64,000 nt of DNA from Marsupella aquatica (lineage: Eukaryota > Plantae > Marchantiophyta), in NCBI GenBank assembly GCA_973895155.1, contig OZ316899.1:2255573-2319572 (forward strand), in the 5' to 3' direction. Shown in pieces: positions 17,601 to 55,724 of the stretch. The stretch's first letter is position 1; every line of letters begins with the position of its first letter. The position numbers and the translations under genes are program-made. The notes under the pieces were generated by a model. It did not search any database. It was not told the DNA's origin and saw only the letters and a list, made by a program, of their open reading frames with translations.

Positions 17601-17788
17601 TGTGATGCCGTGCCAGGATCACGAAGTACTTAGTTAAGCCTAAAATAATGGCTAAATAAAGATTAGGTAGATATAATTAGGGAGTTATAAAGATCGAAGC
17701 CGATTTCAATATGTTTGGGGGAAATTGTGATGGGATTTGATCCAACGGTCGTGATTAAGTGGGATTCGGGTTATGACCTAATCAGGGC

Positions 17789-22147: not shown

Positions 22148-23278
22148 ATAGGCGTACGGACGTGGGTGTACGGCCTCCAGATTTCCAACATTTTAGTGGG
22201 GGGTCACTCATGGGCTTGTTGGGATGAGCTCGCGGAGCTGATTCCAACAAGAGGCGGCGCTCCTCAAACGGAGCCAGGATGAGCAAGTTATGGCCTGGAG
22301 AACTTATGTTTTTGCGGTACGGAAACGGCCATAACTCAGGGGTCTGAAGTCCGTTGAGGGAGCGACTTAGTGATTCGGAAGCAGGAAAAGAAGAGCTATC
22401 CAGGGGTGAGCTCAGGTGTGCACTTGGAAGGGCACCTAGTTTCGGCCATTTTGGGGTGCCTCTCACTTTCAGGGTTCACGTGTACTGTTGGGGCGCCGTC
22501 GAAGGCACCGTCGGCCCCCTTGTTTTGGGTTTAGGGTTTTAGCAGCATGTGTGTGCCGCATGCTCCTCTTCAGTTTAAGGATTTCTCTTAGTGCAAGGTT
22601 TTAGCGGCGCCGCTAGGGTAGCCGCCACCGTTGTGACCCTGTGAGGGGTGCTTTGGTGTGATTTTTCAGTATTTAGGGGGATAGCCCCGAAGTAGTTAGG
22701 GGGACTCAGTGTGAAGTTAGCAAGGAGGGATAGAGTGGAGCCTGAGGAGTTTGAAAGCGTGTTCAGAGTAGTGAGGGGGAGCCATACTCATTGTCCGGAG
22801 AGGCAGGAGTTGAGTAGACGGCAGGAGGCCGGGTTACTCATGCAATGTGTATCGTTTTTCCCAAGAGATATGGATCTGTACATTTGACTTGATGGGCTTT
22901 TGTTGTGTGTTCCTTCTCCCTTTTTCGCTTTCCGAATTGTGTTCTCCCGTTCTATGATTTGAAGAAACTTGCTTGGTTTGAGTCGGCCTTGTGAGTAGGG
23001 GTGGTGACAGCACTCTTTGGGTGACTCCGAGTGAAGGTGTAGTGGGGTAGTCGGCAGGACTTGATCAAAAGCTGTGGGGTGAGGGTAGTCGGTAGACTTG
23101 ATCAAAACCTACATTTCCGGGAGCGGAAACCAAAATACTCATCCTGGTGTGAAAAGAATCCAAATAGCGTCCCTCCACGACCCCGTAATACGATACCAAC
23201 GGTTTAAGCGAAGAAAAGTGCGGTTTGCACGTATTAACCGTTGGAGAGGCAAGTGACATAAGTGTGGTCTTTTGTTTT

Positions 23279-23297
23279 TGGCGCCGCTGCCGGGGAA
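23279..23297 (+). other. PBS of A, tRNA-Asp-like
   Basis: TGGCGCCGCTGCCGGGGAA, 20 nt after the LTR end. Confidence 0.9.
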
Positions 23298-23513
23298 TCC
23301 TTCTTCTTGTTTGACGACACGAAGGAGGGGAGCTACGTCTATTGGGAGTTCAAACCTATCAACCACAACGCAACTTGCGACGGTTGATACGTGAGAAGTT
23401 TGTTGGTTACTTTGTTATTGTACGTCAACCACAACGCATCGTGCGACGGTTGATGTTTACAAATATTGCTTTCTGAGACATTGGTGTAAGTTTGGAATGC
23501 AGGTCTCAATGGG

Positions 23514-29912: not shown

Positions 29913-30376
29913 CTGGTTGCAAAGGCCGATACCTTGTTAATAGTCAATGTAAATAAGCCATTTTTTAATTTTTAGTTAATTCCGTCATTATAGGTTGATG
30001 ATGCCCCAGGTGACTTTATATTCTTTCTCTCATAATAGTTCTAAGATTTGCGGCGACCTAAGTGGGCAAATATTTTGGGACCTTGAAACTAGCCAGGACC
30101 AGCCCCATAGGACTTACCGTTTTGCTTCAAGAGCTATTGTTGAGACCCCCATTGCAAAGTCAGGAGAGGGGGGGGTTTTTTTTTAAATAAATCCCTCCTC
30201 AGGAGGGCGAGTCCCATTAGTGGCCGTCCGAGAGAAAGAGGGGCTGCCTCGCGAGCCCATAGGGCTGCGTGCCCGGGCGATTAATGGGGCTCCGCGAGCT
30301 GAAGGGGCTGCCTCGCGAGCCCATAGGGCTGCGTGCCCGGGCAATTAATGAGGCTCCGCGAGCTGAAGGAGCGCAA

Positions 30377-30753
30377 GCGAGCGGGGGGGGGGGAGTTAAA
30401 GGGCCTCCCGCGAGCTGGGAGGATCACGCGAGCGGGGGGGAGTTAAAGGGCCTCCCGCGAGCTGGGAGGATCACGCGAGCGGGGGGGAGTTAAAGGGCCT
30501 CCCGCGAGCTGGGAGGATCACGCGAGCGGGGGGGAGTTAAAGGGACTCCCGCGAGCTGGGAGGATCACGCGAGCGGGGGGGAGTTAAAGGGCCTCCCGCG
30601 AGCTGGGAGGATCACGCGAGCGGGGGGGAGTTAAAGGGCCTCCCGCGAGCTGGGAGGATCACGCGAGCGGGGGGGAGTTAAAGGGCCTCCCGCGAGCTGG
30701 GAGGATCACGCGAGCGGGGGGGAGTTGAAGGGCCTCCCGCGAGCCGGGAGGAA
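30377..30753 (+). repeat. 47-bp tandem repeat, 7 full copies plus 1 variant
   Basis: Same unit as at 19635. Confidence 0.95.
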
Positions 30754-31175
30754 TGGCCGCGCGCCCTGCATAGGGCCGCGCGCAGGAGGACGCAAGGGTA
30801 AGGCCCGAGAAATGGGCCGGGGCGCATGGCGAAGGCGCCAGGAGTTTTTTCGGTTCTATTTTTTTTTCCTTCCTTTTTCTTTCCCTCTTCCTTTTGCACG
30901 ACCCTCTCATTGCCGAAAGCAAAAACGGGGTTCTTCTCTCTCTTGCCGGAAGCTCTCTCCAGATTCTAATTATTTTTGAAGCTCTCTCTTTCATGGTGGA
31001 TTAGTGGGGCTTGCTGGCGTCATTCTTCCAGGCATTAGTGGCGGCCGCACGGAGTAGTGACGGGAAATTGAGAGAATTTAAGTGATCGGGCTACGGGGGC
31101 TGTTTCGGGCCAGGGAATTGACATTGCCACGGGTGACGGGATTGGTGATTGAGAAATTGATTTCGGGATGCATGG

Positions 31176-33032
31176 ATGCTAGATCAACCAGAGTTTAGTG
31201 CGTCACGCATTCGGAGATACAAGGCTGCTTACCGTGACTACGTGGAGACTCGGATTACACGGGAAAGGGAAGAGAGAGAAGTTATGATGAGCACGGGATT
31301 GGCAGCGGGTTCCTCACCGGTGGGTAGGAAGATTTTTCGCCGAATTTATCCCAAGACCTCCACCAAGGTGATGGAGGATTGTCGGAACATTTTCCAAGCC
31401 ACCGGGCTTACAGAATTCATGAAGGTGGAGATTACCATCCCTTCAGGGAAGAGCTGGGACATTGAGGCCGGGATGGAGTTCCGAACGGAGGGAATCTACT
31501 TTGAATGTCTCAAACGTGTAGTGCCCCATGTGGAGTTGGCTAAGCTATTGTTTCTTGAGAATCAGAAATTCTCATTCACACCTCGGAATATCAGGGGAGA
31601 ACTCACGTTGAAAATGGTGGCCACTTGGGTGACCAATCCTACCTCCACCACCGCCATCCCTCTTTCTGCTGTCAAGGATGTTGAGTATAAGGGCTTCCTG
31701 GCCAAGGTGCATCAACGGGTTCTTGGCAACGTGCAATCCGGAGTGCTGAATGAGGAGCATTTCGTGGTAGCTATGGACATCAAGAACTACCCAGCCCATG
31801 TGTACGGATGGTGGTGCTACGGATTGAAGAAGCTATTGGCCGCTGAGCCCGGGAGTGTGAAACCAGGTGGGGCTGTACATTTGATGGGGTCATTTGTATT
31901 GGCCAGGGCAGAAGGGTTGATTGGTTCTCCGGGGCATGAAGACACGGGATCATCTCTCACCACGGAGATCCGGAGTATTGCCACTACCGTTTTAGGGAAG
32001 CTCACGGAGGAATCATTGTCTGCTGGTGGGGAGGATAATAGAGAAGAAGAGAACCAGGAGGATGATTGCACATTGGAGTGGCTTGAATCACTCGTGGGAG
32101 ATCCGAAACAGCCTCTGGAATACAACATTCCGGATGTTTACTTGGCAGAGCTACGGGATTTCAGAGAGGGAGTCCACGAGGGACTCAAGCTAGTCCACGC
32201 ATTGAGGGAGTCTCTCAAGCACGCCACAGTCAAAGTAGAGACGTTAGAGCAGAGCATCCTGTCACTGAAGGAGGTGATCAAGACCAAGGAGCAGACCATT
32301 CATGAGAAGGTCAGGCACATCAATGCAGCTCACGTAGAGATCACCAACTTGAAGGGAGCTTTGTCCACCAAGGCCAAGGAAGCAGAAGAAGTAGGAGCGT
32401 TGAGGCAAGCATTGGCCAAAGAGAAGCAAAATTCTGGAGAAGTGATGGAGTGGAGGAACCAGGTGGGAGCACTACGGAGTCAGGTGGCAGCCTTTGAGAC
32501 ACGAGCGAAGAGAAGTGAGGCCCTGAGTCTAGGGAAACGGAAGAGTCCCGGCACACCTGGCTCCACACTTTCCCCGGATGTGATCTCCCAAGCTATCGAG
32601 ATGGTGGTGAAGGAGGTTAGTGGGAAGTATGGACCCTTGTTGGATGGAGCCAAGAAGAGTCAGGAGAAGAGTAAGAGCTTGGAGAAGAAGCTCCGGGAGG
32701 TACGGAAATCGTTACGGGAGGCTCAGGTCAGTACGGGGATGCCACCCAGGTCTGTCACCCCCGGGACTCCCATGGCCACGGGGCAAGTTCTACCGTTGGA
32801 GTTGCGGTCCGGAGAAGAGGCTACCCTCTGGAAGGACACAATTGGTGAGGGGTACATCAAGGCGTGGCAGGCCTTGGTTGCTTTGAGGAAGCGCGGGAGC
32901 AGCAGCACTAAGAGTACTCCGTCGAAGAAGAAGAAAAGTACGGTGGCACTCACTCCCGTGAGTGATGAGGAGGAGGACCACTCACGGGGCACAAGTCCGG
33001 GCACCGAGAGCGAAGAAGAAGAGGAGGATTAG
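31176..33032 (+). CDS. Second copy of the 618-aa LTR-encoded accessory protein (one A/V difference)
   Basis: Identical to 20291-22147 except WQALAAL versus WQALVAL. Confidence 0.8.
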   Translation: MLDQPEFSASRIRRYKAAYRDYVETRITREREEREVMMSTGLAAGSSPVGRKIFRRIYPKTSTKVMEDCRNIFQATGLTEFMKVEITIPSGKSWDIEAGMEFRTEGIYFECLKRVVPHVELAKLLFLENQKFSFTPRNIRGELTLKMVATWVTNPTSTTAIPLSAVKDVEYKGFLAKVHQRVLGNVQSGVLNEEHFVVAMDIKNYPAHVYGWWCYGLKKLLAAEPGSVKPGGAVHLMGSFVLARAEGLIGSPGHEDTGSSLTTEIRSIATTVLGKLTEESLSAGGEDNREEENQEDDCTLEWLESLVGDPKQPLEYNIPDVYLAELRDFREGVHEGLKLVHALRESLKHATVKVETLEQSILSLKEVIKTKEQTIHEKVRHINAAHVEITNLKGALSTKAKEAEEVGALRQALAKEKQNSGEVMEWRNQVGALRSQVAAFETRAKRSEALSLGKRKSPGTPGSTLSPDVISQAIEMVVKEVSGKYGPLLDGAKKSQEKSKSLEKKLREVRKSLREAQVSTGMPPRSVTPGTPMATGQVLPLELRSGEEATLWKDTIGEGYIKAWQALVALRKRGSSSTKSTPSKKKKSTVALTPVSDEEEDHSRGTSPGTESEEEEED

Positions 33033-34267
33033 ATAGGCGTACGGACGTGGGTGTACGGCCTCCAGATTTCCAACATTTTAGTGGGGGGTCACTCATGGGC
33101 TTGTTGGGATGAGCTCGCGGAGCTGATTCCAACAAGAGGCGGCGCTCCTCAAACGGAGCCAGGATGAGCAAGTTATGGCCTGGAGAACTTATGTTTTTGC
33201 GGTACGGAAACGGCCATAACTCAGGCGTCTGAAGTCCGTTGAGGGAGCGACTTAGTGATTCGGAAGCAGGAAAAGAAGAGCTATCCAGGGGTGAGCTCAG
33301 GTGTGCACTTGGAAGGGCACCTAGTTTCGGCCATTTTGGGGTGCCTCTCACTTTCAGGGTTCACGTGTACTGTTGGGGCGCCGTCGAAGGCACCGTCGGC
33401 CCCCTTGTTTTGGGTTTAGGGTTTTAGCAGCATGTGTGTGCCGCATGCTCCTCTTCAGTTTAAGGATTTCTCTTAGTGCAAGGTTTTAGCGGCGCCGCTA
33501 GGGTAGCCGCCACCGTTGTGACCCTGTGAGGGGTGCTTTGGTGTGATTTTTCAGTATTTAGGGGGATAGCCCCGAAGTAGTTAGGGGGACTCAGTGTGAA
33601 GTTAGCAAGGAGGGATAGAGTGGAGCCTGAGGAGTTTGAAAGCGTGTTCAGAGTAGTGAGGGGGAGCCATACTCATTGTCCGGAGAGGCAGGAGTTGAGT
33701 AGACGGCAGGAGGCCGGGTTACTCATGCAATGTGTATCGTTTTTCCCAAGAGATATGGATCTGTACATTTGACTTGATGGGCTTTTGTTGTGTGTTCCTT
33801 CTCCCTTTTTCGCTTTCCGAATTGTGTTCTCCCGTTCTATGATTTGAAGAAACTTGCTTGGTTTGAGTCGGCCTTGTGAGTAGGGGTGGTGACAGCACTC
33901 TTTGGGTGACTCCGAGTGAAGGTGTAGTGGGGTAGTCGGCAGGACTTGATCAAAAGCTGTGGGGTGAGGGTAGTCGGTAGACTTGATCAAAACCTACATT
34001 TCCGGGAGCGGAAACCAAAATACTCATCCTGGTGTGAAAAGAATCCAAATAGCGTCCCTCCACGACCCCGTAATACGATACCAACGGTTTAAGCGAAGAA
34101 AAGTGCGGTTTGCACGTATTAACCGTTGGAGAGGCAAGTGACAGAGAGTATTGCGTTTCCAAGCTGAATAGGTGCCGTAAAGAAAGAGGACCAACATAAC
34201 CAAGTGGTTTATGATCGGTTGAGGGTAGTTCTCGGTGTTAGAGGTCTTGGGAACCATGCCACATTTT

Positions 34268-40954: not shown

Positions 40955-41507
40955 TTGATCACGCAAGCCATCAGGAGGCGGCTTCGTAAGGAGGGGACCG
41001 ACACTCTGTACACTAGTGCAATTGCTTGTTCGATCAACCTAGCGAATCAGCTGCCGATCGAACGGGGGAAGTGGTTTGAGAAATTGCGCAGGTTCTTGGC
41101 ATTCGGTGGAATGAACACGGTGAATCAGGCAGGGAAGTTTTGGGGCTGTTTGCTTGAAGAAGCAAGGCAGCTGATACCTACGTATGAAGACGTTGAGCCG
41201 GAGCGCGCAGCCAGAGAACGAGCAGAGCTTGCGCGATTGTGGGGAATTCACAAATCGGCATTCGTAGATACGGAGGAGGTATTGGAAAAGTTCTCGTGGA
41301 CACCCACCAGTGCGGAGCTTGACGAATTGCTAATTCGGGAGAATAAGGTCGTGGGGATCAGGGAGGCAATCAAGAACGTCGGGCAACCACTTTGGGAATT
41401 GAAGGGTCACACTGCAAAGTGGACGAAGGCAGCTATTCTTGGGGAGTATTCAGGCACTGAAGAGATGAAGCGCAAGGGAGGTTTGGCATCTACAACTCCA
41501 GCAAAGC
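40955..41507 (+). pseudogene. B accessory ORF, 3' LTR copy, N-terminal part (continues at 54007-54800)
   Basis: Near-identical to 17789-18347; interrupted by C. Confidence 0.85.
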
Positions 41508-41622
41508 TATGATGCCTAGCCAGGAATCACTCGGCCAGTTAAGTAGGGAAAGCAGGAGTGCACCCTAGAAACACCTTAGTATAGGGACAAAACAAGGAAA
41601 ATATAAACAATTAGGGGCGACT

Positions 41623-44600
41623 ATGGAACCTGGGCCGAGGCCGGAGGTAAGGACGCTGGGGGTGAAAACAAGATTAGGGTTAGGACGCGCTAAGCGTCGG
41701 CGGCTAGGAAGGATCAACGGGAGGAAGAACCGGAAGAGGAGAGGGGTAAGGAGCGCTTGCAGGGAATGGTGGCTCATTTGCGAGCACGAACTAGGCAGAC
41801 GACTACGGGAGGCCAACTACTGTCAGCTGCTTAGGCAAGCACTCGGGGAGAGAGTAGATATTGACGATCGACCTAAGGAGGGTATGAGCAACGTCAATCA
41901 AGCGGCACATTTCTGGGGATGCCTGTTCGAACGGGCAACTGAGTACATCAAGACTTACGAGGACGAAGAATCAGAAAGGGCAGCTCAAGAACGGCAAGAG
42001 CTCGCTCGATTGTGGGAGCTGCAGAAGACGGCTTTCTTAGGAGGCGAACTCATCAAGGCCGAGTTCTTGTGGACTCCTACTTCCAATCAGCTCGACGATC
42101 TTCTGTTTTGCAAAGATAGAGTCATCGGCATCCGAGAAGCCATCAAACGCTGCAACAACATACACTAGGAGTTGAAGGGTAGCACGGAGGGGTGGACAAA
42201 GGCAACCGTGCTAGGAGAGACATCCACGGGAGCCGAAATGAAGAGGAAGGGAGCCGTCAACAATGAAGCCACCCCGGCAAAAAGAACGAGGTCGGCGGCA
42301 CCAAAGAAGCCAGCCGAGCAGCAGAGCAGGAGGCAGGGAGAAGCCAAAGAGGAGGACGATCCCATCAATGCCATTCCAACCAGGGATGACACCTGGAAGG
42401 GCTGGGCGGCAACCCTACCAGAGGAGGTGCAACTACATTTTGCACGGGAGGAGGATGCATGCTTTACGGCCATGCAGACCAAGAAGTACCAAGCCTTCAT
42501 GGCCGGATCCGGCTTAGAGGCCTTTGTAAGATTACCATGGCTGAAGCCGGAGGTGCCGGATTCAGACTTATTAGAATTCGTGGGGTCATGGGAACCCGAG
42601 ACCAATTGCACGAGGATATATGGGAAGGATTTCTATCTTACTCCCAAGGTGATTGCCGAAGTGTTTGGCTTGCCGATAGGCAATAAGACCAAAGTTGATA
42701 CCAGGAAGACCTTGCCTGACAAGGAGTTCCGGTCGTTCCCCGGGCCATCAACGAAGAATGGCTTCTTCCGGAACACCTGCACCAACCCGCACATAGGAGA
42801 GATGATCGACTTCTTGCGGGTGACCATGCATTGTAACTTGCCGAGGGCAGAGATCGGCAAGGCACAGGTCTATCTGGCAGAGAGGCCAGACCCAAGCCGG
42901 GACTACAATGGGTACCTCCTCAACCAATTGAAGAAGATCTTAAAGGAGGAGCAGCAGGTAATCGGCATGGGGAGCGTGTCGCGGCTTGGCTATCACATGC
43001 CGCTGTTGTGCCGGTATGCCAGAGGTCAGACCTTTGCCCCAGTACTTCCCCTGTAGGTAAGGACACCCGAGGAAGCTCCAGCACCGAGGCCGGTAGCAGA
43101 GAAGCCTCAACCACCTGTTAGCCCTACGATTGAGCAGGTGTTTAGGCCAAGGAAGGAAGACTTGCCGATGCAGCAACCAAGCATGCAGAATCTGCTGAAA
43201 ATGCTGGAGAAGGAAAAGACGGCACTGGCACCAGCTTCGGCAGCGGCACCAATACAGGACACTGCCCCAGAGGTCAACCTAAGCAGACTTAGAAGGGAAA
43301 ACCCCTTTACCGGAAATAAGGAGAGAATCAGGCCAGAATCCAAGCCGGGTGTTCGAATGTACGTGGGAGTCTCAAGCTCTGAATCTGAGGCAGAATTGCC
43401 TGAAGCTCCTACCGGCGAAGACGAGAGGGAGAAGCCGGAAGTCCAAGGGTTGGAGGAGGCAGTGGAGGACTGCAGCCATGATAACTCCGGCTATGGGTCG
43501 GACCATCACGTTCCAGGAGTAAGGACCTGTGGCCGGTTTATCCCCACACTTCCAAGGGTAGTTTGAGGGGACCCCAACCAGCAGAGTAGCCCCGAGTCTC
43601 CCCCACCAGATGTTGCTCCCCCGAGCTTTGACGGCATAAAGCAGACGGCACAGGAATTCCAGGAGCAACTTAGGGAAGCAGAAAAGGCAGCCCTGGCTAG
43701 GGAAAAGGATTTGCCAGGAGGAGATTGGCCGGAGGACATCAGGCGGCTAGCCAAAAAAGGAAGCAAACCTCTAGCCACGATTGAAGAGATCCGCAAGACG
43801 GCTTGGGAGCAGAGGCCGCGATGGGCGATGCCGATCACTTCTACTTACTCCACCTACGCTAAGAATAGAGCCATGGAGTATGGTGAGATATGTGGGGAAC
43901 TTGCGCTCGGCATCTTTGGGGAGGAGTTGGAGGTAGGACCCTTTTTCCATAGGGAGCAGTTGGAGAAGCACCAGTTAGAAGAAGCGGTGGCTTTAGAGAG
44001 AACGAGGTCATCTGGCGGCTTAGGAGGATGGAAGCCAAGATTGAAGATCTAAGGGCGGCCAAGAAAGCCCAAGATGAACTACAGATTAAGCGGCATGAAC
44101 TGAACATCATGCAGGGGCAGTTGGACACCGTGCAGGCTGATAATCAGATTATCAAGGATAAACTGACTCAGACCCAGGAAGAATTGGCCGACGCAATCAA
44201 GGACAGGGAGAAATGGAAGAAGGAGCTGAGAGACGCAGAGGAGGCCCATATAGCAGTCAACAACCGGGTCGCGGTGGAGACTCAGAGAAGGGAGAGGGCG
44301 CTGAAGGGAGAGCTCGAGGTCATCCGCCAAGCCCTTGAGCAGAAGGAGGCCGAGTTAGGGAAATCCTATCAAGGGATTGTTGCGCTACAGCAGGAGCTTG
44401 CGTCCCTGACGGCCAGCTTCAAGGCCGACCTGCGGGAGAAGGACGCCCAGCTCGACCAGACTTATGCCAAGATGAATAACATGGAGTCTGAGGTCGTAGC
44501 GGAGCTCGACAAGGAGCTAAGAGCAACCCAAGAGGAGAGGGCTACCACCAAGAAGGAATTGGAGGAAGCCCACAGGGAATTGGAGGAAGCCAAAAACGAG

Positions 44601-45002
44601 CTGGAGGAGGCACGTAAGGACCTGGATGAGACCCAGGAGGAGTTGGAAGAAATCACGAGGAAGATGGAGAATCTACAGCGGCGGGCCGACAACCAAACAG
44701 AGCGGCTGAAGAAACAAGCCGCAGTATTTAAATGCTTAGCTGCATCAGGTCCATCTCCCATTGGGGCAAACCAGTTACCCGGGGTGGTAATTGCCGAAGG
44801 ACCAGCCGTGACAGTCACACGGCCCGGTGCCAGACGTTGGCAGCAAGGGGAAGGAACCGGCTATGGAGATAGTGAAGAAGAAGAAGCGGAAACCTTCGGG
44901 GTCCGGAGGTTATTCGACCCCTCAAGCCGTACTCAAACCGGTACACTAGTAGAAAATGGGCCCATTTTAGACCATATTAAACGACTGTGCACCACCATTT
45001 AG
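41623..45002 (+). pseudogene. LTR-internal accessory gene of C (about 1120 codons, few stops and a frameshift)
   Basis: N domain shared with B; core MAGSGLEAFVRLPW...DLLEFVGSWE...IYGKDFYLTPKVIAEVFGLP...NGFFRNTCTNPHI; long coiled coil at 44028-44720. Confidence 0.85.
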
Positions 45003-47542
45003 GACTCACAAACAACTGGACAGGACTCAAGTCGTTTATAGGACTGCGAGTTGTATGTTTTGTTACTAAAATAGACTTAGTTGTTTTCAAAACTGAGGGC
45101 TTAGTTGTATAAGAGACTTGATTTTCCAGTCGTTTGTAGTCTTTCATACGGGCTGGATGGGTGAGTCATTTTCAACGACTAAAACAATGTTTGTAGGGTA
45201 GTCATTTTAAGTACTGTTTGGGTTGACAAAATGACTAAGAGAAATATCAAGGTCCGGTTCATGTAAGTCATTCATTCTAACTAGGAATGACCTGATAAGT
45301 ATGCACCAATAACATTCATACACATTCATTCATACATAGGTTGAACTCTATTTCACATTCAACTTGAACTCTATTGCACAAAGTGTACCTCCATACAATG
45401 TACACACATTCTGCATCAAACAAAACAGATTCAAACACCAAACACCATATATACAAATGGATACACAATTTCCACACTTGCTGCATAGATACATACATAG
45501 ATCACAAATGGCAGGAACACAAATGACAAAGAATAATTCATCCTACTTACCAAGTAAAATTGGTACATGATGTTTGCCTTGGATCTTCCTCCAAGTCAAT
45601 GCTGCAATCTAACATAATTACTATCTAATATTCTATCTACATTCCCACTCACTATGGAAAACAAACCTACTCTGATGGTCAGAGCTCAAGAATTCTCATT
45701 GCATCTGCAATTACATCCTGAGGTGGATCATAGTCATCATCATACTACCTATCACCAGGCATCCCTCGTCAATTACTCTGGCTCCTTCTAGGGTATCGAT
45801 TATGTGATTTTTCTTTAGCTACTTACCAACCTGGCACTTGATGTGGGCCCTGTGCATCCTGTATAGATTCATTCTTCTGTGAGCCCCCTGTATCCATGTC
45901 TTCATCCACATCTAATCCGTCCTCTTCACCCCACTGTCCAAGCCCCAAGTTTGACTCCATGTCATCACCTTTTTCCCCATAGCTTTTGCACTACATCCAC
46001 AACCAAATAGGGACAATAAAACATAACCCAATTTCATGGATGCATTTGGCCTACAAACAATTCATGTATGCTTGACTTTCCATGGCATCCCTTCTGTGTG
46101 TCACTTTATTCCATCCTACTGGACGACAAACACATGTCATCTATGGTCACCCTGTAAGACAATGCAACCAAGTTGACCATCCATCCATCCATATATCTCT
46201 CTTGCTTGACAATTACTTTATCACGCAAATTTCCCCTAACTAATGTCCATGCAAACAATTTAGGTTATTCAGATCACAAGCACGCTGTCACTAGAAGAAA
46301 ACTACCTTCTACACTCTTTACAATATTTAGTCTCACGAAACAATTAGTTTCACTAACAATTAGTGTCACACACTAATTAGGGGTATCCCTTGATTTTCAG
46401 TCAACTGACCAGAGGTTCAGACTGTTGCATACAAACAAGAGAAACTTTGACTCCGCTGCCAAATTCATACCTTCATACGTCTACCATTAATAGAGACGAC
46501 AAGGACTTCAAAAGTGAGTGCATCAAAAAAGTAAGCACATTTAATGTATCTCACCGCATACAAAGGCATAAAACATGTATTTAATGTGAGCTATAGGCTG
46601 CAAGTAGATAATGGACTCTACATTTAAAAAATAAGAAGAGATGTAGCCTAGTCCTAATAGGCCCCACCAAATCACAGAATTAAAGGAGCATGGACCACAA
46701 AAAAGCACTAGCCTATTGAACTTCAAAAACTAGCTACAAGAATTACCGAACTCAGCACAATGTTGTACAGAAAGAGAAGTTACCCCACTATTGTGGCATG
46801 GTTTGTACTACAGATGGACAGGCAAATGGATCACTCAACGCAAAATCTGAAGAGAAGTATTATTCTATAAACAGAAAATTAAAAGTAAATACAAACTGAT
46901 TCCTAAGAGGTGAGAAGGCTATATACAATGAACACAAAGTCCTAATGAATACATAAGACAATAGCAAAATGAAAAGTAATGATGTTTTGGCTTATTTCTA
47001 GATCTGTCTGATATACAAGAGACCTTTTCAACCATGGGTAAGGAAAGTTCTTTACTATATTTTTCACCTTGTATGATATCTATAAAACGATGTCATTGCT
47101 TCATCACCCTTTTGACAAAGTCCATGGAGCTGCGTACTGTGGTGCAGGTGGCATCATTGTAAGCAAAGTTTTTTCAAACTAAGAGCTCAATAGATGGTGG
47201 CGGCTGATAGAGAATTCTACAGAAAGGGACATTCTTCTCAATGTCCCAATAGGCCCCACGGGCTCAAAGAATCAAAGCGGAGTGGACAAAATACCCTACT
47301 TGCACAATGAGATACAAAACGTAGCTACGACAACAACCACAAATAGCACAAAAGACATTCTACAGAAAGAGAAGATTCAAACTAAACTTGTGGCAGGAGC
47401 TGGACTATATAATCAGTGTACTATAGGCCAAATTAGGATAGGTCTTTATCAACTATTGAGCTGCATTCTTTCTGATTTCTTATTTTCAGCATATATGATT
47501 CTATACAATGCTTCCGCCCTTCCGACTGATTATTGTTAGGAT

Positions 47543-50171
47543 TGTGATGCCAATGACATGGTCCTTATTTTGTAATCTGATTAAGTAGGTTGCTGTATGC
47601 AAGGAGTAGCTATTGATATTGCATAACAATTAGCAAGATGGCAAGAATAGGGGCAATCAGGGCGTTAAGAGTAGGGAAATAAAAGCTATGTCGCGGGTGG
47701 TCGACGACCATATCTCTTTCAATATGTCACCAAATCCGGATCTATAAAGAGCATTGGAAAGATCTGGTCAAGGCGAGTAAAATCGATATAAAACCATCTC
47801 CTTGTACCTGAGGATCACGAAGGGATGTTGTGAATGCCGATAAACACCAGTTTATGCCCTTAACACCAGACTATCATAGCAAGACTCTATCACACATCAC
47901 CCAAGCTCAATCCCAAGGAACCAAGGTTGGGGATCAGATCTGCGCTCATGATAGTTCTGGTGAGAAGGGGTCTTCATATCGGGCCCGTACACACAGCACT
48001 ATGGTGCGCAATAGGTCTATACATATGCTTACTGTCATAGGTATGTTTCTATTCCGCCGCCGGAATGTACCCATAAACCAGTGACTCCTGACTGATTCCC
48101 GGCTTAGGGACTTCTAAGCCATTGCCCCACCACTCTGCCATTCCACTCTCAACAATCAGAGCTATGACAGTCCTCACCCAACCCGCTTCAATGCACCCGG
48201 TACACCTCTCAGTGGCGCTGCTAGTTCCATCATACACTCAGATTGCCTCACACACACACACGTCCATGAGAGAAATGAGGCCTGAGAGGAAAACTCAATT
48301 AGATTCAAAGATGTGCACAATAGTTCACTGAGAACACTTGATCCAAATACTAGGGCCGAAGGCTGTCTCCTCCAGATTGTGACGTGCTTGCCCTGCAAGC
48401 CCCGTGCTTGCCATGCAAGCTCAATCCTGAACCTGAGCCCGGCTCACTCCAGATTGCGACGGCAGATTGGACTCAAACCAATCCCGTACTTGCCTTGCAA
48501 ACTCAATCCTGAACTCAACCTCCTTCACTGCACTTCATTCTTGGGGGCACATACAGATCTCACACCTCCAATTCAGAACGTCAAGTTACGCATGCATAGT
48601 TGACTCGACTTCAAAGCTGGTACCAGGCCTAACGGCGATCTACCCCAGACTGCAATGAGGCCCGGCCTCATGCTTGCCCTGCAAGCTCAGCTCTGGCCAT
48701 AGATCCCTTAGTGCTCTCCACCAGACAAAGGCCGGGACTCCCCATGGATCACGTAGCCTTGCCAGACTGAACTGTAAATGCTCCTCCTGCTGCCCCTTAA
48801 TCAGTACCTCAGCCTCCCTAATGTGCCCACCGCAAATCGAATTGAAATCCTCCCCACAGTTTACAATCACCAATACATCACCTATCACCAAGGCTCTGTA
48901 TCGGGGGAAAAGAACCCAGTTGTGCTGCCCACTAGAAAGAGCCACAATCCAGCTCGCAAACCTAGCAACCCGTTGCTGTGAAGCTTGGCTGATTACTCCC
49001 TGAGTAATAGCACAACCAAGCTCTCCCCAACACGCAGCGTCCAAGTCCAGCCTTGCTTGCACAGAGCTCCTCCCCGCTGCTCAGTCTAAGTGAGATCACA
49101 CAACTGAAGTCCCCCCCCCCTTGCCTCTACCGGGGGCTGCTCTATATACTCTCATACTGAGCCCAAATGGGTGGATACTACGCTGCTGGAGCCCCATCCC
49201 AGCCCTAACAGAGCCGCCACTATCTCTAACTATTGAACCCTAACTCGCAACTTTATTTCTATCTCGAATTGGCTATGTACTTCGGATTCGGCCCTCCTCC
49301 ATGGTTTTCGCGAGCTTGCGCCTCCTCTCCCGATTTCTCTATTTAACCATTTTCTGCGTGGATGGCAGCGTTGGAAGCGGCTTGAGCTCCTCTTTCCAAC
49401 GAGGTCAATTATAGCCGATTTGGTCAAATACACAGAGAGTTATGCCCCCGCAACCGAGAGGGGGTACTCACTGCTGCGCTAACCCGAGTTACATAGCTAA
49501 CCCGAGTTTGGCTAACCTAGCTATCCTATCTAACCCGAGTAGAGCTAACCCGTGGTCTCGGGTTAGGCCGCTACCCGCTATCCGCTAACCTAGCCTAAGC
49601 TGAGCCCGAATCCGAGCTTACCTATGCTAACCTGAGGCCGCGCTGACCTGAGCTAAGCTGAAGCCGTGTTGACCTGAGCTAAGCTGAAGCCGTGCTGACC
49701 TGAGCTAAGCTGAAGACGTTCTTACCTGAGCTAAGCTGAAGCCGTGCTTACCTAAGCTAAGCTGAAGCCGTGCTGACCTGAGCTAAGCTGAAGCCGTGCT
49801 CACATAAGCTAAGCCGTGGTTAACCCGAAACTGAAGCCGAATCCGCTAATTCCAGCCACAAGTTAACCCGTCACACTAATCAGGCCGTATCTTTCTTAAT
49901 ACACCTCCGTTTCTCGAGTGTTTTATATCGATTTTACTCGCCTTGACCAGATCTTTCCAATGCTCTTTACAGATCCGGATTTGGTGACATATTGAAAGAG
50001 ATATGGTCGTCGACCACCCGCGACATAGCTTTTATTTCCCTACTCTTAACGCCCTGATTGCCCCTATTCTTGCCATCTTGCTAATTGTTATGCAATATCA
50101 ATAGCTACTCCTTGCATACAGCAACCTACTTAATCAGATTACAAAATAAGGACCATGTCATTGGCGTCACA
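47543..50171 (-). mobile_element. E: LTR-like element with 252-bp terminal inverted repeats and 5-bp TSD AGGAT
   Basis: 47543-47794 is the reverse complement of 49920-50171 (2 mismatches seen); TG...CA ends; AGGAT at 47538-47542 and 50172-50176; interior shares motifs with D. Confidence 0.92.
49642..49797 (+). repeat. 26-bp tandem repeat, 6 copies plus a partial
   Basis: Unit GCTGACCTGAGCTAAGCTGAAGCCGT. Confidence 0.92.
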
Positions 50172-52756
50172 AGGATCAATGAATTATTCAGTTGGTCCTG
50201 TCATAAAGACAAGAAGGATACTAGGATTTGAGTCTCCACAAGGGAGAAGAACTAAGCAACGTACGGAGGACAAATGCGGTCAATGTCAAAATTCACAAAG
50301 AAATATTCTTTAGAAATGATAAATAATGCAGCTCACTAGGACTATGAGCAAGACCTGAACCCCTTGCTTCTAGACAAGACTAAAGTCCACACAAAAGTGC
50401 TCCTATCGTAGATTAGATACGTGGAGCTGCTATTCAATATGCTTCAAGAAAGGAATAAGGTGCGAAGTCTACAACCGAAGGAGCTAATTTGAAACAAATT
50501 TGTTTTCATAAACTTCAATGAGAGGTTCATTTCTCATGATTCTGGAACTTGTTCAGACGAGCCGGAAGAAGAGAAATGTAGAGAATAGAAGAGACTGAAT
50601 GGTATTGGTAGCTCAAATACCAAGGAGGGAGTGAACTTGCAAGTAGACGTCATAGTAGCACCTCGCTCAAACTCAGACAAATTCATGCAGCCAAAACCTT
50701 GTAGTAGCGGTGACGTTGTGTGATTGCAGCTCCTGCTAAGTCGATCAGCTGTACACAGACGTTGATTGCAGCTTTGTTTGCTTAGCACCTCACTCGATCA
50801 GCAGCTCAGCTCATTCAGGTTCATCCTCCGTTCAATTGATGAGGACCCCCAGTCACTATGGCCTTCCAATCGGTTCACCAAGCCTTGGAGCTCACTTGAC
50901 CCTAACGTACATTGAGTCGATCTGCACCACCGCTCACTCATCTTGCATCTTCAGTCTACACGTTAGGACAGATCCACGTTGATCCTCACTACATTATGAG
51001 GTTCAAGCTCCCTTCTAGCTATATGAGCAGGTCCCGGTCACGTGACCCCACTCAAAGTCGTAGCTCTTGAGCTCAGCTCCCTTGGCCAGCTCAAATGAGG
51101 TCCGCGATCCCAACGGCATGCAGCTTCACAGCTTGATCAATAAGTATAAACTAAACTCAGCAGTTCAGTTCAGCTCGGTTACAAACTTGGGCTCCCTCTC
51201 AGTTCATGAATAGCATCAGCACAGCGCAGCCCACCGCTTGCAACTAAAACTATTGTCAGTGCAACTCAGTCAAAGCAGCTCAGCCGCCTTAGCTTCACAC
51301 CGTAGCAAAAAATGATGAGACCAATAGCAATCACCACAAGGCTTCAAAATGGCGAGAGTGTGTTGTTCTCTCCCCAAACACATGAGCATAGAAAGCCAAA
51401 TGATGCCGCAACACTATCAGTCTCATTGGATCGACTAGCCGCACACTCTCACTGGATTGATCATCATTAACAAACTCAATAGCATAAACTTATCCCTTGC
51501 TCTTCTAGGTAAGCTTGCTCCTCACTCACAATCCCTCGCTCTTCAGGCAAGTCACTCACATTACCCACAGTTGATGCACATTCCTACTTGGTGACAAAAT
51601 GCATGCTCGATCTCCATTTTTGTGAGGACGCTATGTGCAAATTGAGTAACGGCTCCACGCAAAAGGAATCCAAGGTGCACTGATGCATTAAACCCTAAAC
51701 CCTTGCTTAATTAAAGCCCAATTTGTTTATGACCGTCGGATCCTTCTTTGATTAAACTGTTGATTGTGAAAGTGTTGTAGATTCTCTGCTCATGCACAAG
51801 TGATTTGCCGCTTGATTGTGCAACAATACTGAACACATTGAGCACAAACACATATCTAGCATCCATGGAGGGAAACAAGTAGTCCTGGTACTTTTATTTA
51901 TTTTAACATTTTATTATTTATTATATATATGTCGGCTTAGTAAGACCATCATGGGGATGGTTAAAAAGGTTCATAATAATTAATATGTAAATACTTCCAG
52001 GCCTAAACGTCATATAATGTGAATCTTCTTGAAAATATAAAAGTCCCAAATAAACCTTAAATCCACAATAAAGTAACTAACCTCATTCAAGTAGACATTG
52101 AGTTCCTTATTAAAGGTGTAGAAATTAATTGTAACATACTTTGAAAACATACTTCTTTTATGACTTCCTCATGACTTACACACAAAAGTCACATAAGTGG
52201 CTTTCAAACTAGTCACTAACCGGCCTTCCCGTTTGCTAGACACTCTGGAACCCTAAAGTTGAGCCGGCCCTTGCGGGAGAACCATAAAACGTAGCGTCCA
52301 AACTATCATCTCCCAACACCAATGAAGTAAATGTGCTGGTTCCCGCTCGTTGCCTCGCGATTGTAAACCCTCTCCACAAAACCTCCACTAGACAGGAAGG
52401 AAAATCCATTGAGCATAATACTAGGACTTACTATTTGGCAAAGACCCATGCACTTTTAACATGGAGGACAACTACTATGACACTCCGCCAAATCACTCTA
52501 AACACAATAAAGAAGCCAATTAATTAGTTGTGCAACCCCCCCCATTATCATTATCAATAGCCAACAATAAAACCAATGACATACTAGAGTGTTCACCCTT
52601 CAAAAAGTACCAAGGTTACATGTCATAGTCTTTTCATAAATCATTAAACATTGAAAGTCTTTTCTAGTGTTCATGTGAACCGGTACAATGGTTCCTAGTC
52701 GTTTAGAGTATGTAAAAAGGACTTAGTGGGCTTAGTCCTATAAGGTTCAGTCTAAA

Positions 52757-53220
52757 TTGCCCCGCTTTCTACTAGTGGTACCAACCTCCGGCATGAACAC
52801 GGCAATAGATTTCGCTACCACCAAAGGTGGGGATGGCGCGACCCAAGCCGAACTACTCAGTAATGAGGCCGGTATCCCAGATCCACCTCTTGAGCAAGCC
52901 GGGGAGGCCGTGGCCGAGGCTGAGGCCGTAGCCGAGGCTGATGTTGAAGCCGATACCGTTGCCGGGGGTGGACCCAGTCAGGCCGATGGAGAGTTGACTC
53001 AGTCAAGGGCCGGTAATCTATCAAAGAACAAACCTACGGCAGTGGCTGAGGTGGAAGCGTTGGGGGCGTCCACTGAGGAACAGCCACCGCTGCCATGATG
53101 GTGGTGGAGGGCCGCTCCTTTCAAGGAGGGCGAACGTGGAGGGAGGAGGCATGAGTGGGCAGGGCGGGCTCAGATCTCTAAGTTTAGGATTAGGATCAGG
53201 ACCAGGAGGCGGCCCTGACA
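52757..53220 (+). pseudogene. Acidic-then-basic ORF tail in the right part of C
   Basis: EAVAEAEAVAEADVEAD...PPLP*WWWRAAPFKEGERGGRR...RIRIRTRRRP, paralleling B 54600-54899. Confidence 0.5.
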
Positions 53221-54006
53221 CTTAGCTTAGTGGGATTGCGGTTCCACTGGTAAGAGCAACACTTGTACTCCTGCCTCGCTGTACATAGGTAGATCCAGTT
53301 AGGTAGATTAGGCTTACGCTGCAAAGAATTAGGCGGATCCACTACCAGGATAAGTACCTGGGCAGCGGGGAGATCAGGGCCTCTTCTTTAGCAAGTTTTT
53401 AGTTTGCACCAGCCGGGCTGGGATCAAGTAGTAAGAGAAGCTCTCAGTTAGTCATACAGTGACCCTTGTGTATATTCATGTTTCCTCATGCCTAAGAGCT
53501 GAATAGAGTTGGCCTCACGGCTTAGTTCGCAGAGCTTGTGTATGAGATGTACTGTTTGTATGGCAAGTGCATGGTATGACTAAGTCAGAATGAGTCATTT
53601 TCCTATTTGTGTGTCGCATTAACTTGTGTGAAGAGTGCCCACATCAACCAATAGAGGAAGGAAAGTAAGCAGGGGAGTGAGAGTTGGATGTGTCGAGCTG
53701 AGAGAGGTCTTAGCGGCTTAACCAAGCCTATTGGGGATCATTCCGGCGGCGGAATCCAAACATACCTAACAAGACGGAGGGGAAGACAAGGGAAGGCCTA
53801 GATTAGGCCGGCTACGTATCTCATGACCCGATGAAGGATCTGTCCAGTATATGTGTGTGTTAATAGTAATAGTAGTAGTAGAAGGTTAGCAGCGTCCCAT
53901 GCCGCTAAGCCGCGGAAACGGCCTCGCCAAGCGCGAAACCTGCGGGAATCGGCTTGAGCTGGGGGGTTTCTTGGGTTTAGGGAGCCATGGGACGCACCAC
54001 AAAAGC

Positions 54007-54800
54007 GAACTAGGTTGGAGAGACCAATCAAGATGGAATCCGGGCCAATTAGAGATCGGGCTATAGAAGATAAAAACATGACAGGGTGGGCGAACAGGTT
54101 ACCTGCCGATTTACAATTACAGTTCGCAAGAGATGAGGATGAGGTCTTCAGTGCCGTTCAGGATAACAAATATGCAGGATATATGAATGACACTGGGTTG
54201 GAGGGCTTTGTCAGGTTGCCTTGGAGAATGGTAGACATACCGGATGAGGATCTGTTGGACTTCGTGGGATGCTGGGAGGCTTCTTCCAACATAACGCTGC
54301 TGTATGGAAAGGTGTTCAAATTAACTCCTGCGCTTATCGAAGCCGTGCAGTTGGTGGCAGACTTGGCAAAGACGTTCATGGGGCCAGACGATAATAAAGT
54401 TAAAACCGTTAAAGCCACTCCGGAGGAAGTCGAGAGCATGGCTGCTCACATTTGTGGTACTGTGGCCCTGAAGGCAGCGGTGGTAGAGGTAAGTACTGCG
54501 GATCAACTTGGAGCTGCGGTAACAGGTTTAGACGATGGTACTGCTTCTATGGACACACAGAACGTGAAACCGTGGGTTATCGAGACCGAGCGCATCGGGG
54601 AAAAGGCTTGGATTGAGGAAGTTAAGGCAAAGGCTCTCCAAGCCGTTTCCCAGGAGGATGCGGATGCAGATGCAGATGCAGATGCCGATGCCGAGACCGA
54701 TGCCGGGGCCGGCAAAACAGAAGCCGAAGGGGTCGGGCCGGGGCCGATGGCAGGAGAAGGTGCAGAGTCAGAAGATTCGGACTTACCCCCGATCATCTGA
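54007..54800 (+). pseudogene. B accessory ORF, 3' LTR copy, core plus acidic tail (in-frame deletion junction near 54346)
   Basis: Matches 18348-18681, then switches to QLVADLAK...DADADADADAETD. Confidence 0.8.
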
Positions 54801-55724
54801 CAATTAAGGAGGGCCAGTCATCGGTTGGAAGGAGGACGTGGCGGCAAGAGAAGGGCGCGGGCCAGAAGGGCGCGGGCCAGAAGGGCGCGACTGTTGTAGG
54901 ATGGGACAGGGCAAGTAGCGCCCTGTCGGCTTAGATAGTAGTAGATGCTCGGTTCACACAGGGTTCCGGGCTATTCAAGTTTTTAGGTGATAGTTTTTTT
55001 TAGGATTATCGCGGTGGAAGGCCATGTGTGGTGGTTAGGATCTGTGTTGTTGTTTTTTAAAGCGCTGCAAGGATAAAACCTGGGCAGCGTGGTTTCAGGG
55101 GCTTTTTCTTAGTCAAGGCTTTAGTACGTGTTAATCTGTATTGTTGTAAACACAGGAAGCTCTCGGCTAAATCTAGACCGCAGGGTATCAGTAAACCACC
55201 AGTTCCCTTGGATTTCTGAGCAATTGTTTGAATTGAGTTGGCTTCGTTGCATAGTTTGCAGATTCTTGCCATCCAAGAAGTTGAGTGTTATGATATCTGT
55301 TGCTTGATCGATTAAAGTCAGATAGGGTGAACTGTTGAGCAAAATACAATCGCATTGCCTTGATTGGAGACTGCCCAAATCAAACTCTGAGAGAACAGTG
55401 AGGATTGAGAGTGTTAGTCGGTGAAGTGTGGGTTGAGTCAGTCTGAAAAAGACCTTCAGCCGGCTTAAGAAATTAAGCCGTAGAGGTACATTCCGGGGGC
55501 GAAATACAAATATACCTGAAGAAGTTAAAGAGGAATTAGGTGTCTCAGTTGTGCACAATTCACAAGCCCAGTGAAAGAATCGGTCCGGTAAGTGTGGACC
55601 CAAGGAGAGTATCGCGTTTCCAAGCTGAATAGCTGCCGTAAGGAAAGAGGACCGACATAACCAAGTGGTTTATGATCGGTTGAGGATAGTTCTCGGTGTT
55701 AGAGGTCTTGGGAACCGTGCCACA

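What the first reader, a model, noticed from the sequence alone, without database searches (positions are those of the whole stretch)
47543..50171. Element E: an LTR body bounded by 252-bp inverted repeats with an integrase-type 5-bp TSD
Seen: both outer ends begin TGTGA(T/C)GCC like the B and C LTR starts, the arms differ at only 2 of 252 positions, and AGGAT flanks both sides. The interior runs as a minus-strand LTR: 26-bp repeats, a TATATAGAG..CGGTAGAGGCAAGGGG site shared with D, the conserved stem-loop, and a plausible native end ..GCATTCACA at 47829. A 34-nt filler then joins it to an inverted copy of its own start. No PBS, PPT or coding domain was found. Inference: this is either a one-off aberrant cDNA with two U3 attachment ends, or a non-autonomous TIR element mobilised by a Gypsy integrase. 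The latter would echo Ginger transposons (TGT ends, long TIRs) and be an LTR-to-TIR transition form.
Basis: partly seen in the sequence, partly recalled or inferred. Interest (0 to 1): 0.85.

Follow-up and report, generated by a model that had tools for sequence, protein, structure and literature searches.

The report
Retrotransposon LTR with two inverted start ends
A complete 2.3-kb retrotransposon LTR, joined to an inverted copy of its own first 252 bases and flanked by a perfect 5-base duplication, was most likely inserted once by an integrase as a mis-made DNA copy; nothing shows it is a new mobile family.

Summary
The arms 47543-47794 and 49920-50171 are 252-bp inverted repeats with 2 mismatches. 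AGGAT lies directly outside both ends. The 2343 bp at 47829-50171 read as one complete minus-strand Ty3/Gypsy-type LTR. A 34-nt filler (47795-47828) joins that LTR to the inverted copy of its own first 252 bases. E has no coding capacity, no recognisable PBS or PPT, and no second copy in the window.

Three ordinary LTR elements in the same nest also have 5-bp duplications. The best reading is therefore one integrase-mediated insertion of an aberrant LTR-derived DNA that carried the U3 terminus at both ends. That DNA could have arisen by strand switching during plus-strand synthesis, or by end joining of two cDNA pieces. Which of the two cannot be told from the sequence.

The alternative, a TIR family moved by an integrase, has no support, and it could not be tested properly. 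Two metagenome scans, one viral scan and one protein-database search with E-specific probes found nothing, and the host genome, seemingly bryophyte-like, appears absent from the collections. E fits no Ginger-type family.

A likely side effect is a 252-bp hairpin RNA if the locus is read through. This is a real and uncommon structure of moderate interest.

The parts
47538..47542 (.). Left copy of the 5-bp target-site duplication, AGGAT
   Evidence: Read directly; identical to 50172-50176; the only flanking match of 5 bp or more among inverted pairs in the window
47543..47794 (+). Left arm: forward copy of LTR positions 1-252 (U3 start, TGTGATGCC...)
   Evidence: 252 bp, 250/252 identical to the reverse complement of 49920-50171
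47795..47828 (.). 34-nt filler of unknown origin between the inverted arm and the U5 end of the LTR
   Evidence: No match of 9 nt or more inside E, and local alignment to the LTR no better than shuffles. The only 12-mer elsewhere in the window is at 17615. Not significantly similar to the post-LTR leaders of D1, X or G. No TGG-type PBS.
47829..50171 (-). Complete LTR, 2343 bp, minus strand: TGTGACGCC...GGCATTCACA
   Evidence: Family start motif. Promoter core and hairpin block in the same order and orientation as in D1, X and Y, with the expected block-to-end distance. No coding domains.
49920..50171 (-). Right arm: the LTR's own first 252 bases (U3 start)
49608..49814 (-). Tandem array of a 26-bp unit, 8 copies, in U3 (LTR positions 358-564)
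   Evidence: TRF score 295, 87% matches; repeat family D1
49116..49150 (-). Promoter core: TATATAG followed by CGGTAGAGGCAAGGGG (LTR position about 1024); marks the approximate U3/R border
   Evidence: 88.6% over 35 nt to D1 at 13685-13719. Three-way alignment with D1 and D0 shows conserved blocks. TATA position.
48038..48071 (-). Conserved hairpin block (GGTACATTCCGGCGGCGGAATA..CATACCT), 209 nt before the LTR 3' end
   Evidence: Shared with X (19010-19042, 55485-55517), Y (53739-53768) and D1 (13193-13230). Folds as a hairpin in E, Y and D1, with one compensatory change in D1.
50172..50176 (.). Right copy of the 5-bp target-site duplication, AGGAT
   Evidence: Read directly

Best explanation
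E is the product of one integrase-catalysed insertion of an aberrant, LTR-derived linear DNA that carried the U3 terminus at both ends.

Shown:
- The body is a complete Ty3/Gypsy-type LTR with native U3 and U5 termini.
- It is followed by 34 nt of unrelated sequence and then by the reverse complement of its own first 252 bases, ending exactly at U3 position 1.
- The whole unit is flanked by a perfect 5-bp duplication, the signature of every normal LTR insertion in this nest.

Inferred: how the rearranged DNA formed before integration. There are two routes.
(a) Strand switching during plus-strand synthesis. A strand carrying LTR plus about 34 nt switches to a plus-sense U3 template at position 252 and runs off at its natural 5' end. 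The same product arises if a nascent 252-nt plus strand stalls just before the purine-rich tract that starts 4 nt on and then copies back along an LTR-plus-leader strand.
(b) End joining, with filler DNA, of a broken U3 fragment onto the U5 end of another cDNA. A later LTR-LTR recombination may have reduced a full element to a solo LTR.

The native termini of this LTR are themselves a near-palindrome (TGTGAYGCCAAT... against TGTGAATGCCGAT...). A U3/U3 donor therefore looks almost like a normal U3/U5 donor to the integrase.

Once inserted, E is immobile. Its only likely activity is passive: read-through transcription would give a 252-bp perfect-stem hairpin RNA able to feed siRNA against the U3 of its own family.
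For: - Exact arms, filler and AGGAT duplication.
- The same 5-bp duplication signature in three bona fide elements of the nest: G GAGAG, X TGTAG, Y AAAGC.
- LTR identity and orientation of the body. The terminal 9-mer occurs only at LTR starts. The promoter core is shared with D1 and D0. The hairpin block lies 209 nt from the 3' end, against 208, 214 and 228 in X, D1 and Y.
- The arm ends exactly at U3 position 1 and the LTR ends exactly at its CA. These boundaries are set by reverse transcription and integrase, not by random breakage.
- Arm divergence K = 0.008 lies between G (0.0012) and X (0.006-0.054). This fits the nesting order X > Y > E.
- E is compositionally distinct from both flanks: 50% GC against 37-45%.
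- No coding capacity or RNA gene.
- Rearranged and inverted cDNA forms are abundant in plant virus-like particles (PMC7197481).
- The arms pair in register in the predicted fold of either strand: 251 pairs, duplex about -478 kcal/mol.
Against: - Only one example exists, and the parent family is not in the window. The 34-nt filler therefore cannot be checked against the parent's PBS or leader. It has no TGG-type PBS and matches nothing.
- There is no microhomology at the arm/filler junction to support a simple template switch.
- A direct integrase-made autointegration junction would have no filler, so that specific route does not fit.
- In vivo use of two U3 ends by a Ty3/Gypsy integrase is assumed from in vitro retroviral work (my own knowledge), not shown here.
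- The hairpin-RNA consequence is pure inference: there are no expression or small-RNA data.
Confidence: 0.6

Rival explanations
1. Stepwise genomic origin. Two copies of the same family inserted in opposite orientation, either nested in each other's LTR or side by side at the same target. Later deletions and solo-LTR formation trimmed them to the present structure. The matching AGGAT belongs to one of the insertions or arose by target reuse.
For: Antisense nested self-insertions that place LTRs in hairpin configuration have been seen experimentally for EVD in Arabidopsis (PMC11624286). The window is a dense nest with repeated insertions into LTRs. Illegitimate deletion is a common fate of plant LTR elements (own knowledge). 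The rc U3 end and the U5 end share TCACA, which could serve as microhomology.
Against: It needs at least three events with base-exact outcomes. One deletion breakpoint must fall exactly on an LTR terminus, and the outer flank must be restored exactly to AGGAT. An integrase junction at LTR position 252 would leave no 34-nt filler. The filler is not a remnant of the LTR, although any remnant should be about 99% identical, as the arms are.
Confidence: 0.2
2. E is a member of a non-autonomous TIR family derived from an LTR. It would be mobilised as DNA by an integrase-type transposase, either a Ginger/GingerRoot-like enzyme or a Gypsy integrase: an LTR-to-TIR transition form.
For: TG..CA ends, long TIRs and a 5-bp duplication resemble integrase-related DNA transposons (PMC2836005). 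GingerRoot elements occur in bryophytes and lycophytes (PMC6839031), and the host's retroelement proteins look bryophyte-like. The absence of copies is uninformative because the host genome is not in any searchable collection.
Against: - No second copy and no integrase-only transposase gene in 64 kb.
- The duplication length does not fit Ginger1 (4 bp, CCGG/CCGT), most Ginger2 (4 bp) or GingerRoot (6 bp, mostly TA..TA ends, TIR 100-150 bp).
- The interior is an entire intact LTR rather than a deletion derivative of a transposon.
- The asymmetric architecture (full LTR, filler, 252-bp arm) looks like an accident, not an evolved TIR.
- An LTR-retrotransposon integrase has no known excision activity on chromosomal DNA (own knowledge).
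- E lacks PBS, PPT and 3' R for RNA-mediated copying.
Confidence: 0.08
3. Assembly artefact: a mis-join or chimeric read created the inverted left arm.
For: Inverted repeats in TE nests are classic places for mis-assembly. No reads are available to check.
Against: The two arms differ at two positions. The structure has a unique 34-nt filler. It is bounded by a perfect 5-bp duplication placed exactly at the two U3 termini. A mis-join would not create any of these.
Confidence: 0.04

Closest known systems
Solo LTR / LTR of a Ty3/Gypsy retrotransposon
   Same: TG..CA termini, family-specific terminal 9-mer, U3 tandem repeats, TATA core, conserved hairpin block about 210 nt from the 3' end, 5-bp target duplication, no coding capacity.
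   Different: A solo LTR has the U5 end against one copy of the duplication. Here the U5 end is internal, and a second, inverted U3 terminus (252 bp plus a 34-nt filler) takes its place.
Aberrant reverse-transcription and autointegration products (Ty1 inversion or deletion circles; SISYPHUS cDNA variants in Arabidopsis VLPs, PMC7197481)
   Same: An LTR next to an inverted portion of the same element. The boundaries are defined by cDNA termini. Generated before chromosomal integration.
   Different: Described autointegration products are circles and dead ends, and their junctions are direct with no filler. E is a linear product that went on to integrate into the chromosome with a normal duplication.
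Ginger1, Ginger2/TDD and GingerRoot integrase-related DNA transposons (PMC2836005, PMC6839031)
   Same: TGT.. / TG..CA termini like Gypsy LTRs. TIRs of tens to a few hundred bp. Short duplications; TDD-4 and TDD-5 make 5 bp. GingerRoot occurs in bryophytes.
   Different: Ginger1 makes 4-bp CCGG/CCGT duplications. Most Ginger2 make 4 bp at AT-rich sites. GingerRoot makes 6 bp with mostly TA..TA ends and 100-150 bp TIRs. These families are multi-copy and have a transposase-encoding master. E is single-copy here, and its interior is a whole LTR.
Transposon-derived hairpin loci (maize Mu killer, PMC3440606; EVD antisense nested insertion, PMC11624286)
   Same: An inverted duplication of a transposon terminal or regulatory region that could give a hairpin RNA on read-through transcription and silence the family in trans.
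   Different: Mu killer is a rearranged DNA transposon, and the EVD case is a normal nested insertion. E seems to have been made as a unit before integration. No small-RNA or expression data exist for E.
DIRS-type retroelements with inverted terminal repeats
   Same: A retroelement-derived unit bounded by inverted repeats.
   Different: DIRS elements encode a tyrosine recombinase and make no target duplication. E has a 5-bp duplication and no coding capacity.

Membership tests
Ty3/Gypsy-type LTR (body 47829-50171) | TG..CA termini with a short terminal inverted repeat | tested here: met
   TGTGACGCC...GGCATTCACA. The start 9-mer is found only at LTR starts in the window.
Ty3/Gypsy-type LTR (body 47829-50171) | Internal LTR landmarks in the same order and spacing as related LTRs (promoter core, downstream conserved block, end) | tested here: met
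   Promoter core shared with D1 and D0. Hairpin block 209 nt from the end, against 208, 214 and 228.
Ty3/Gypsy-type LTR (body 47829-50171) | Membership of a family with a gag-pol-bearing master element whose two LTRs match this one | not testable with these tools
   No parent in the window. External scans and protein look-ups were empty.
Integrase-mediated insertion | Target-site duplication of the length made by the local elements (5 bp), directly abutting the TG/CA ends | tested here: met
   AGGAT/AGGAT for E. G, X and Y have GAGAG, TGTAG and AAAGC.
Complete LTR retrotransposon (autonomous or non-autonomous) | Two LTRs in direct orientation with a PBS and a PPT between them | tested here: not met
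   The repeats are inverted. There is no TGG-type PBS and no PPT at the expected places. No tRNA-like match.
Ginger1 | 4-bp CCGG or CCGT target duplication; TIR 40-270 bp; TGTNR ends | tested here: not met
   The duplication is 5 bp, AGGAT. TIR length and TGTGA ends would fit (for the definition).
Ginger2/TDD | 4-bp duplication (5 bp in TDD-4 and TDD-5) at AT-rich RTATAY targets; TIR 50-180 bp; a master encoding an integrase-like transposase | tested here: inconclusive
   5 bp matches only the Dictyostelium TDD members. The target is not RTATAY and the TIR is 252 bp. There is no transposase in the window. A master elsewhere cannot be excluded.
GingerRoot | 6-bp (rarely 7-8) duplication; 100-150 bp TIR; mostly TA..TA ends | tested here: not met
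   5-bp duplication, 252-bp arms, TG..CA ends.
Any mobile TIR family | Several copies with the same ends and internal junctions at different sites with different duplications | not testable with these tools
   Single copy in 64 kb. Host genome absent from the searchable collections.
DIRS-like elements | Tyrosine recombinase gene; no target duplication | tested here: not met
   No coding domains; a 5-bp duplication is present.
Hairpin-RNA silencing locus (Mu killer type) | Inverted duplication of a transposon's terminal or regulatory region able to form long dsRNA | tested here: met
   251 in-register arm pairs in the MFE fold of either strand.
Hairpin-RNA silencing locus (Mu killer type) | Transcription through the repeat, and siRNAs that silence the family in trans | not testable with these tools
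   No RNA or small-RNA data.

The most novel reading that the evidence does not exclude
E is one copy of a living or recently living non-autonomous family in which an LTR has become a TIR element. Two U3 attachment sites in inverted orientation would be recognised and moved as DNA by an integrase-type enzyme. That would be a natural intermediate between LTR retrotransposons and Ginger-like DNA transposons, found in a bryophyte-like genome.
Probability: 0.07. Interest if true: 0.85.

Novelty: new variant of a known kind. Interest (0 to 1): 0.4.

Why it matters
If the main reading is right, E is a clean natural record that a Ty3/Gypsy integrase can complete a concerted chromosomal insertion using two U3 ends, and that rearranged cDNA is not always a dead end. 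This bears on how LTR elements give rise to odd derivatives. It also bears on how hairpin-forming copies arise that could start silencing of an active family, the open question addressed in the Mu killer and EVD work. If the structure proved multi-copy, it would be direct evidence for an LTR-to-TIR transition. As a single locus without expression data it remains a well-documented curiosity.

Tried and rejected
1. Looking for other copies or the parent family.
   - Self-BLAST of E against the window gave only short conserved LTR blocks.
The TIR-end scan of viral contigs also gave 0 hits.
   - The exact-product look-up of the longest E ORF found none. The homology search with that ORF found none.
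   - Look-ups of the G ORF and the G polyprotein to identify the genome found none. The host genome therefore appears absent, and copy number stays untested.
2. Origin of the filler.
   - No k-mer of 9 or more inside E, and alignment to the LTR no better than shuffles.
   - One 12-mer matches near the X LTR start. I estimate about 0.2 such matches by chance, so it is not significant.
   - No significant similarity to the post-LTR leaders of D1, X or G. No tRNA or Rfam similarity.
   - The filler contains AGGATCA, which equals the duplication plus two bases of the right flank. This was noted but judged post hoc.
   - Tf1-like self-priming complementarity to the transcript start was not found.
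3. A direct integrase-made autointegration junction (one-ended or inversion circle) has the right topology. I rejected it as the exact route because it predicts no filler.
4. D0/D1 (6838-8475 against 13640-15684) as a second E-like inverted structure was rejected. Identity is 67-76%, the similarity is mostly a shared ORF and the promoter core, and there is no duplication.
5. E as the missing LTR of Y was rejected: the only similarity is the hairpin block.
6. Literature searches for integrated LTR elements with inverted U3 ends found no direct precedent.

Full report
**Observation**

The window is a nest of Ty3/Gypsy-type LTR retrotransposons. Reading 47400-50300 and running the repeat finders confirm one inverted repeat. 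The arms are 47543-47794 and 49920-50171, 252 bp each. The tool reports 253 nt because the T at 47542 and the A at 50172 happen to be complementary.

The arms differ at two positions, LTR position 6 (T/C) and position 202 (A/G). Both are transitions at methylatable cytosines, a CpG and a CHG on the other strand. AGGAT lies immediately outside both ends, at 47538-47542 and 50172-50176. A scan of every inverted pair in the window within 15 kb found a flanking match of 5 bp or more only here.

**The body is a complete LTR on the minus strand**

- The 9-mer TGTGAYGCC occurs five times in 64 kb against 1.0 expected. All five are either starts of LTRs (12714 minus, 17601, 40768) or the two outer ends of E.
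- Reading down from 50171 one meets a 26-bp tandem array of 8 copies (49608-49814).
- Next comes a promoter core, TATATAG followed by CGGTAGAGGCAAGGGG (49116-49150). It aligns in blocks with the equivalent regions of two other LTRs, D1 and D0.
- Next comes a 35-nt block containing a hairpin (48038-48071). The same block is present in the LTRs of X, Y and D1.
- The sequence ...GGCATTCACA ends at 47829, 209 nt after that block. The same distance is 208 nt in X, 214 in D1 and 228 in Y.

Order, orientation and spacing therefore all agree. 47829-50171 is one intact 2343-bp LTR with both native termini.

There is no gag-pol similarity anywhere between 41508 and 53996. The 10 ORFs lying inside E have no Pfam domain. 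There is no Rfam family or tRNA.

**The 34-nt filler**

Between the U5 end and the inverted arm lie 34 nt (47795-47828).
- They match nothing in E.
- Elsewhere in the window they share only one 12-mer, near an X LTR start. I estimate about 0.2 such matches by chance.
- They are not significantly similar to the sequences following the LTRs of D1, X or G.
- They contain no TGG-type primer-binding site.

This last point is weak evidence. Canonical PBS placement is also unclear in other elements here. In G, for example, the TGGCGCC motif sits 20 nt past the LTR end.

**Context**

Self-comparison and the junction sequences give the following nest.
- Element X spans 17601-55725, with duplication TGTAG.
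- Element G spans 19135-34143. It has 4.1-kb LTRs, an intact 2132-aa polyprotein and duplication GAGAG. It sits inside X's 5' LTR.
- Unit Y spans 41508-53996, with duplication AAAGC, inside X's 3' LTR.
- E sits inside an AT-rich part of Y.

E has 50% GC against 37-45% in its flanks. All four insertions make 5-bp duplications.

Arm divergence in E is K = 0.008. It lies between G's LTR pair (0.0012) and X's LTR pair (0.006-0.054 by segment). This fits the nesting order.

The host is not identified. The G polyprotein is closest to unnamed metagenome proteins (77-81% identity). Among named ones at comparable coverage it is closest to a liverwort protein (Riccia, 59% identity over 82% of the query; another Riccia 57% over 55%; Marchantia 49% over 100%).

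**Best explanation**

Two boundaries of E are not arbitrary. The inverted arm stops exactly at U3 position 1, and the LTR stops exactly at its terminal CA. Reverse transcription and integrase define those positions; breakage and repair of chromosomal DNA do not. Together with a duplication of the local integrase's length, the simplest account is a single concerted integration of a linear DNA that had the U3 terminus at both ends.

The native termini of this LTR are themselves nearly palindromic (TGTGAYGCCAAT against TGTGAATGCCGAT). A U3/U3 donor therefore differs little from the normal substrate.

How the donor arose is inferred. There are two routes.
- Strand switching in plus-strand synthesis. 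A strand consisting of the LTR plus about 34 nt copies back on a plus-sense U3 from position 252 and runs off at its natural 5' end. Equivalently, a nascent 252-nt plus strand stalls and then copies an LTR-plus-leader strand. A purine-rich tract (GAGAAACGGAGG) begins 4 nt after position 252. It could be a pause site, but this is only a suggestion.
- End joining, with filler DNA, of a U3 fragment to the U5 end of another cDNA, possibly followed by solo-LTR formation.

A direct autointegration junction has the right topology but predicts no filler, so I do not favour it. Inverted and truncated cDNA forms are abundant in plant virus-like particles (PMC7197481).

I put 0.6 on a single pre-formed aberrant donor.

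**Rivals**

- Stepwise genomic origin (0.2): antisense nested or adjacent insertions plus deletions. Antisense self-nesting is documented for EVD (PMC11624286). This route needs several base-exact coincidences and does not explain the filler.
- Mobile TIR family (0.08). It cannot be excluded because I could not search the host genome. It fails the definitions of Ginger1 (4-bp CCGG/CCGT), most Ginger2 (4 bp, AT-rich target) and GingerRoot (6 bp, TA..TA, 100-150 bp TIR). No transposase is nearby. The asymmetric make-up (whole LTR, filler, short arm) looks accidental. E also cannot be copied through RNA, because it lacks a 3' R, a PBS and a PPT.
- Assembly artefact (0.04). It is unlikely given two arm mismatches, a unique filler and the exact duplication.

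**What it may do now**

In the predicted fold of either strand the arms pair in register, with 251 pairs. If transcribed by read-through, the locus would make a 252-bp dsRNA stem corresponding to the first 252 bases of U3. That is the kind of trigger described for Mu killer (PMC3440606) and discussed for EVD. Both arm differences are consistent with C-to-T decay at methylated sites in the left arm. This is inference only.

**External searches**

All came back empty:
- two metagenome scans;
- one viral scan;
- exact-product look-ups;
- a homology search with the longest E ORF.

These blanks say that the genome is not represented. They do not say that E is unique.

**Verdict**

It is an unusual variant of a known process, aberrant cDNA integrated by an LTR-element integrase. 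Interest is moderate (0.4). The transition-form reading deserves a genome-wide junction search before it is taken further.

Noticed in passing
window 40955-41512 + 54015-54800 (X LTR; 5' copy 17789-18681), 41623-45002 (Y), 12341-9914 minus (D2), 15669-15074 minus (D1), 6910-7777 (D0): The LTRs of several different families carry homologous protein-coding ORFs, 41-73% amino-acid identity between X, Y and D2 and about 22-24% to D1 and D0. In D1 the ORF lies upstream of the promoter core, so it sits in U3, like nef or sag in retroviruses. There is no Pfam match; a coiled-coil region follows in Y (44028-45002). E's LTR lacks this ORF.
   Followed up: partly
window 20291-22147 and 31176-33032 (both LTRs of element G, 19135-34143): G's 4.1-kb LTR holds an intact 618-aa ORF with a coiled-coil stretch and no Pfam domain. 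It is unrelated to the X/Y/D ORF family. Only 13 relatives exist among 1.84 billion representative proteins, mostly fragments. One full-length relative (27% identity) is a called gene in assembly GCA_965154635.1 (locus L001).
   Followed up: partly
window 48038-48071, 19010-19042, 55485-55517, 53739-53768, 13193-13230: A 35-nt block (GGTACATTCCGGCGGCGGAATA..CATACCT) is conserved in otherwise unalignable LTR families, always about 210-230 nt before the LTR 3' end. It folds as a 6-bp hairpin inside an outer stem in three of the four families. D1 has one compensatory change and X a weakened stem. Its function is unknown; it may mark the R/U5 region.
   Followed up: partly
window 41508-53996 (unit Y): Y starts like an LTR (TATGATGCC, ORF family as above, 70-74% DNA identity to D2). 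It ends like one (hairpin block, ...CACCACA) and has a clean 5-bp duplication (AAAGC) inside X's 3' LTR. It has no pair of LTRs and no gag-pol. Without E it is 9.8 kb. It may be a giant solo LTR with old insertions, or some other non-autonomous unit.
   Followed up: partly
window 19135-34143 (element G): G looks very young and possibly active. The LTR pair has 5 substitutions in 4124 aligned bases, plus one 143-bp copy-number difference in a 47-bp tandem array. Its 2132-aa gag-pol ORF is uninterrupted. Its TGGCGCC PBS-like motif lies 20 nt after the LTR end, which is not where a tRNA primer site should be.
   Followed up: no
window 54347-55284 versus 18681-18809: X's 3' LTR has 937 bp where its 5' LTR has 128 bp. 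This is either a deletion in the 5' copy or an insertion in the 3' copy after integration.
   Followed up: no
window 47453-47480 and 50312-50339: A 28-nt imperfect inverted repeat (24/28) brackets the E insertion site. The two halves would lie about 200 bp apart in the empty site. It may be chance or a small palindromic element that E landed in.
   Followed up: no
window 6838-8475 (+) and 13640-15684 (-): Two LTRs of different families (D0, D1; 67-76% identity) face each other with D2 between them. This superficially mimics E's topology on a larger scale. The similarity is confined to the shared ORF and the promoter core, and there is no flanking duplication.
   Followed up: yes
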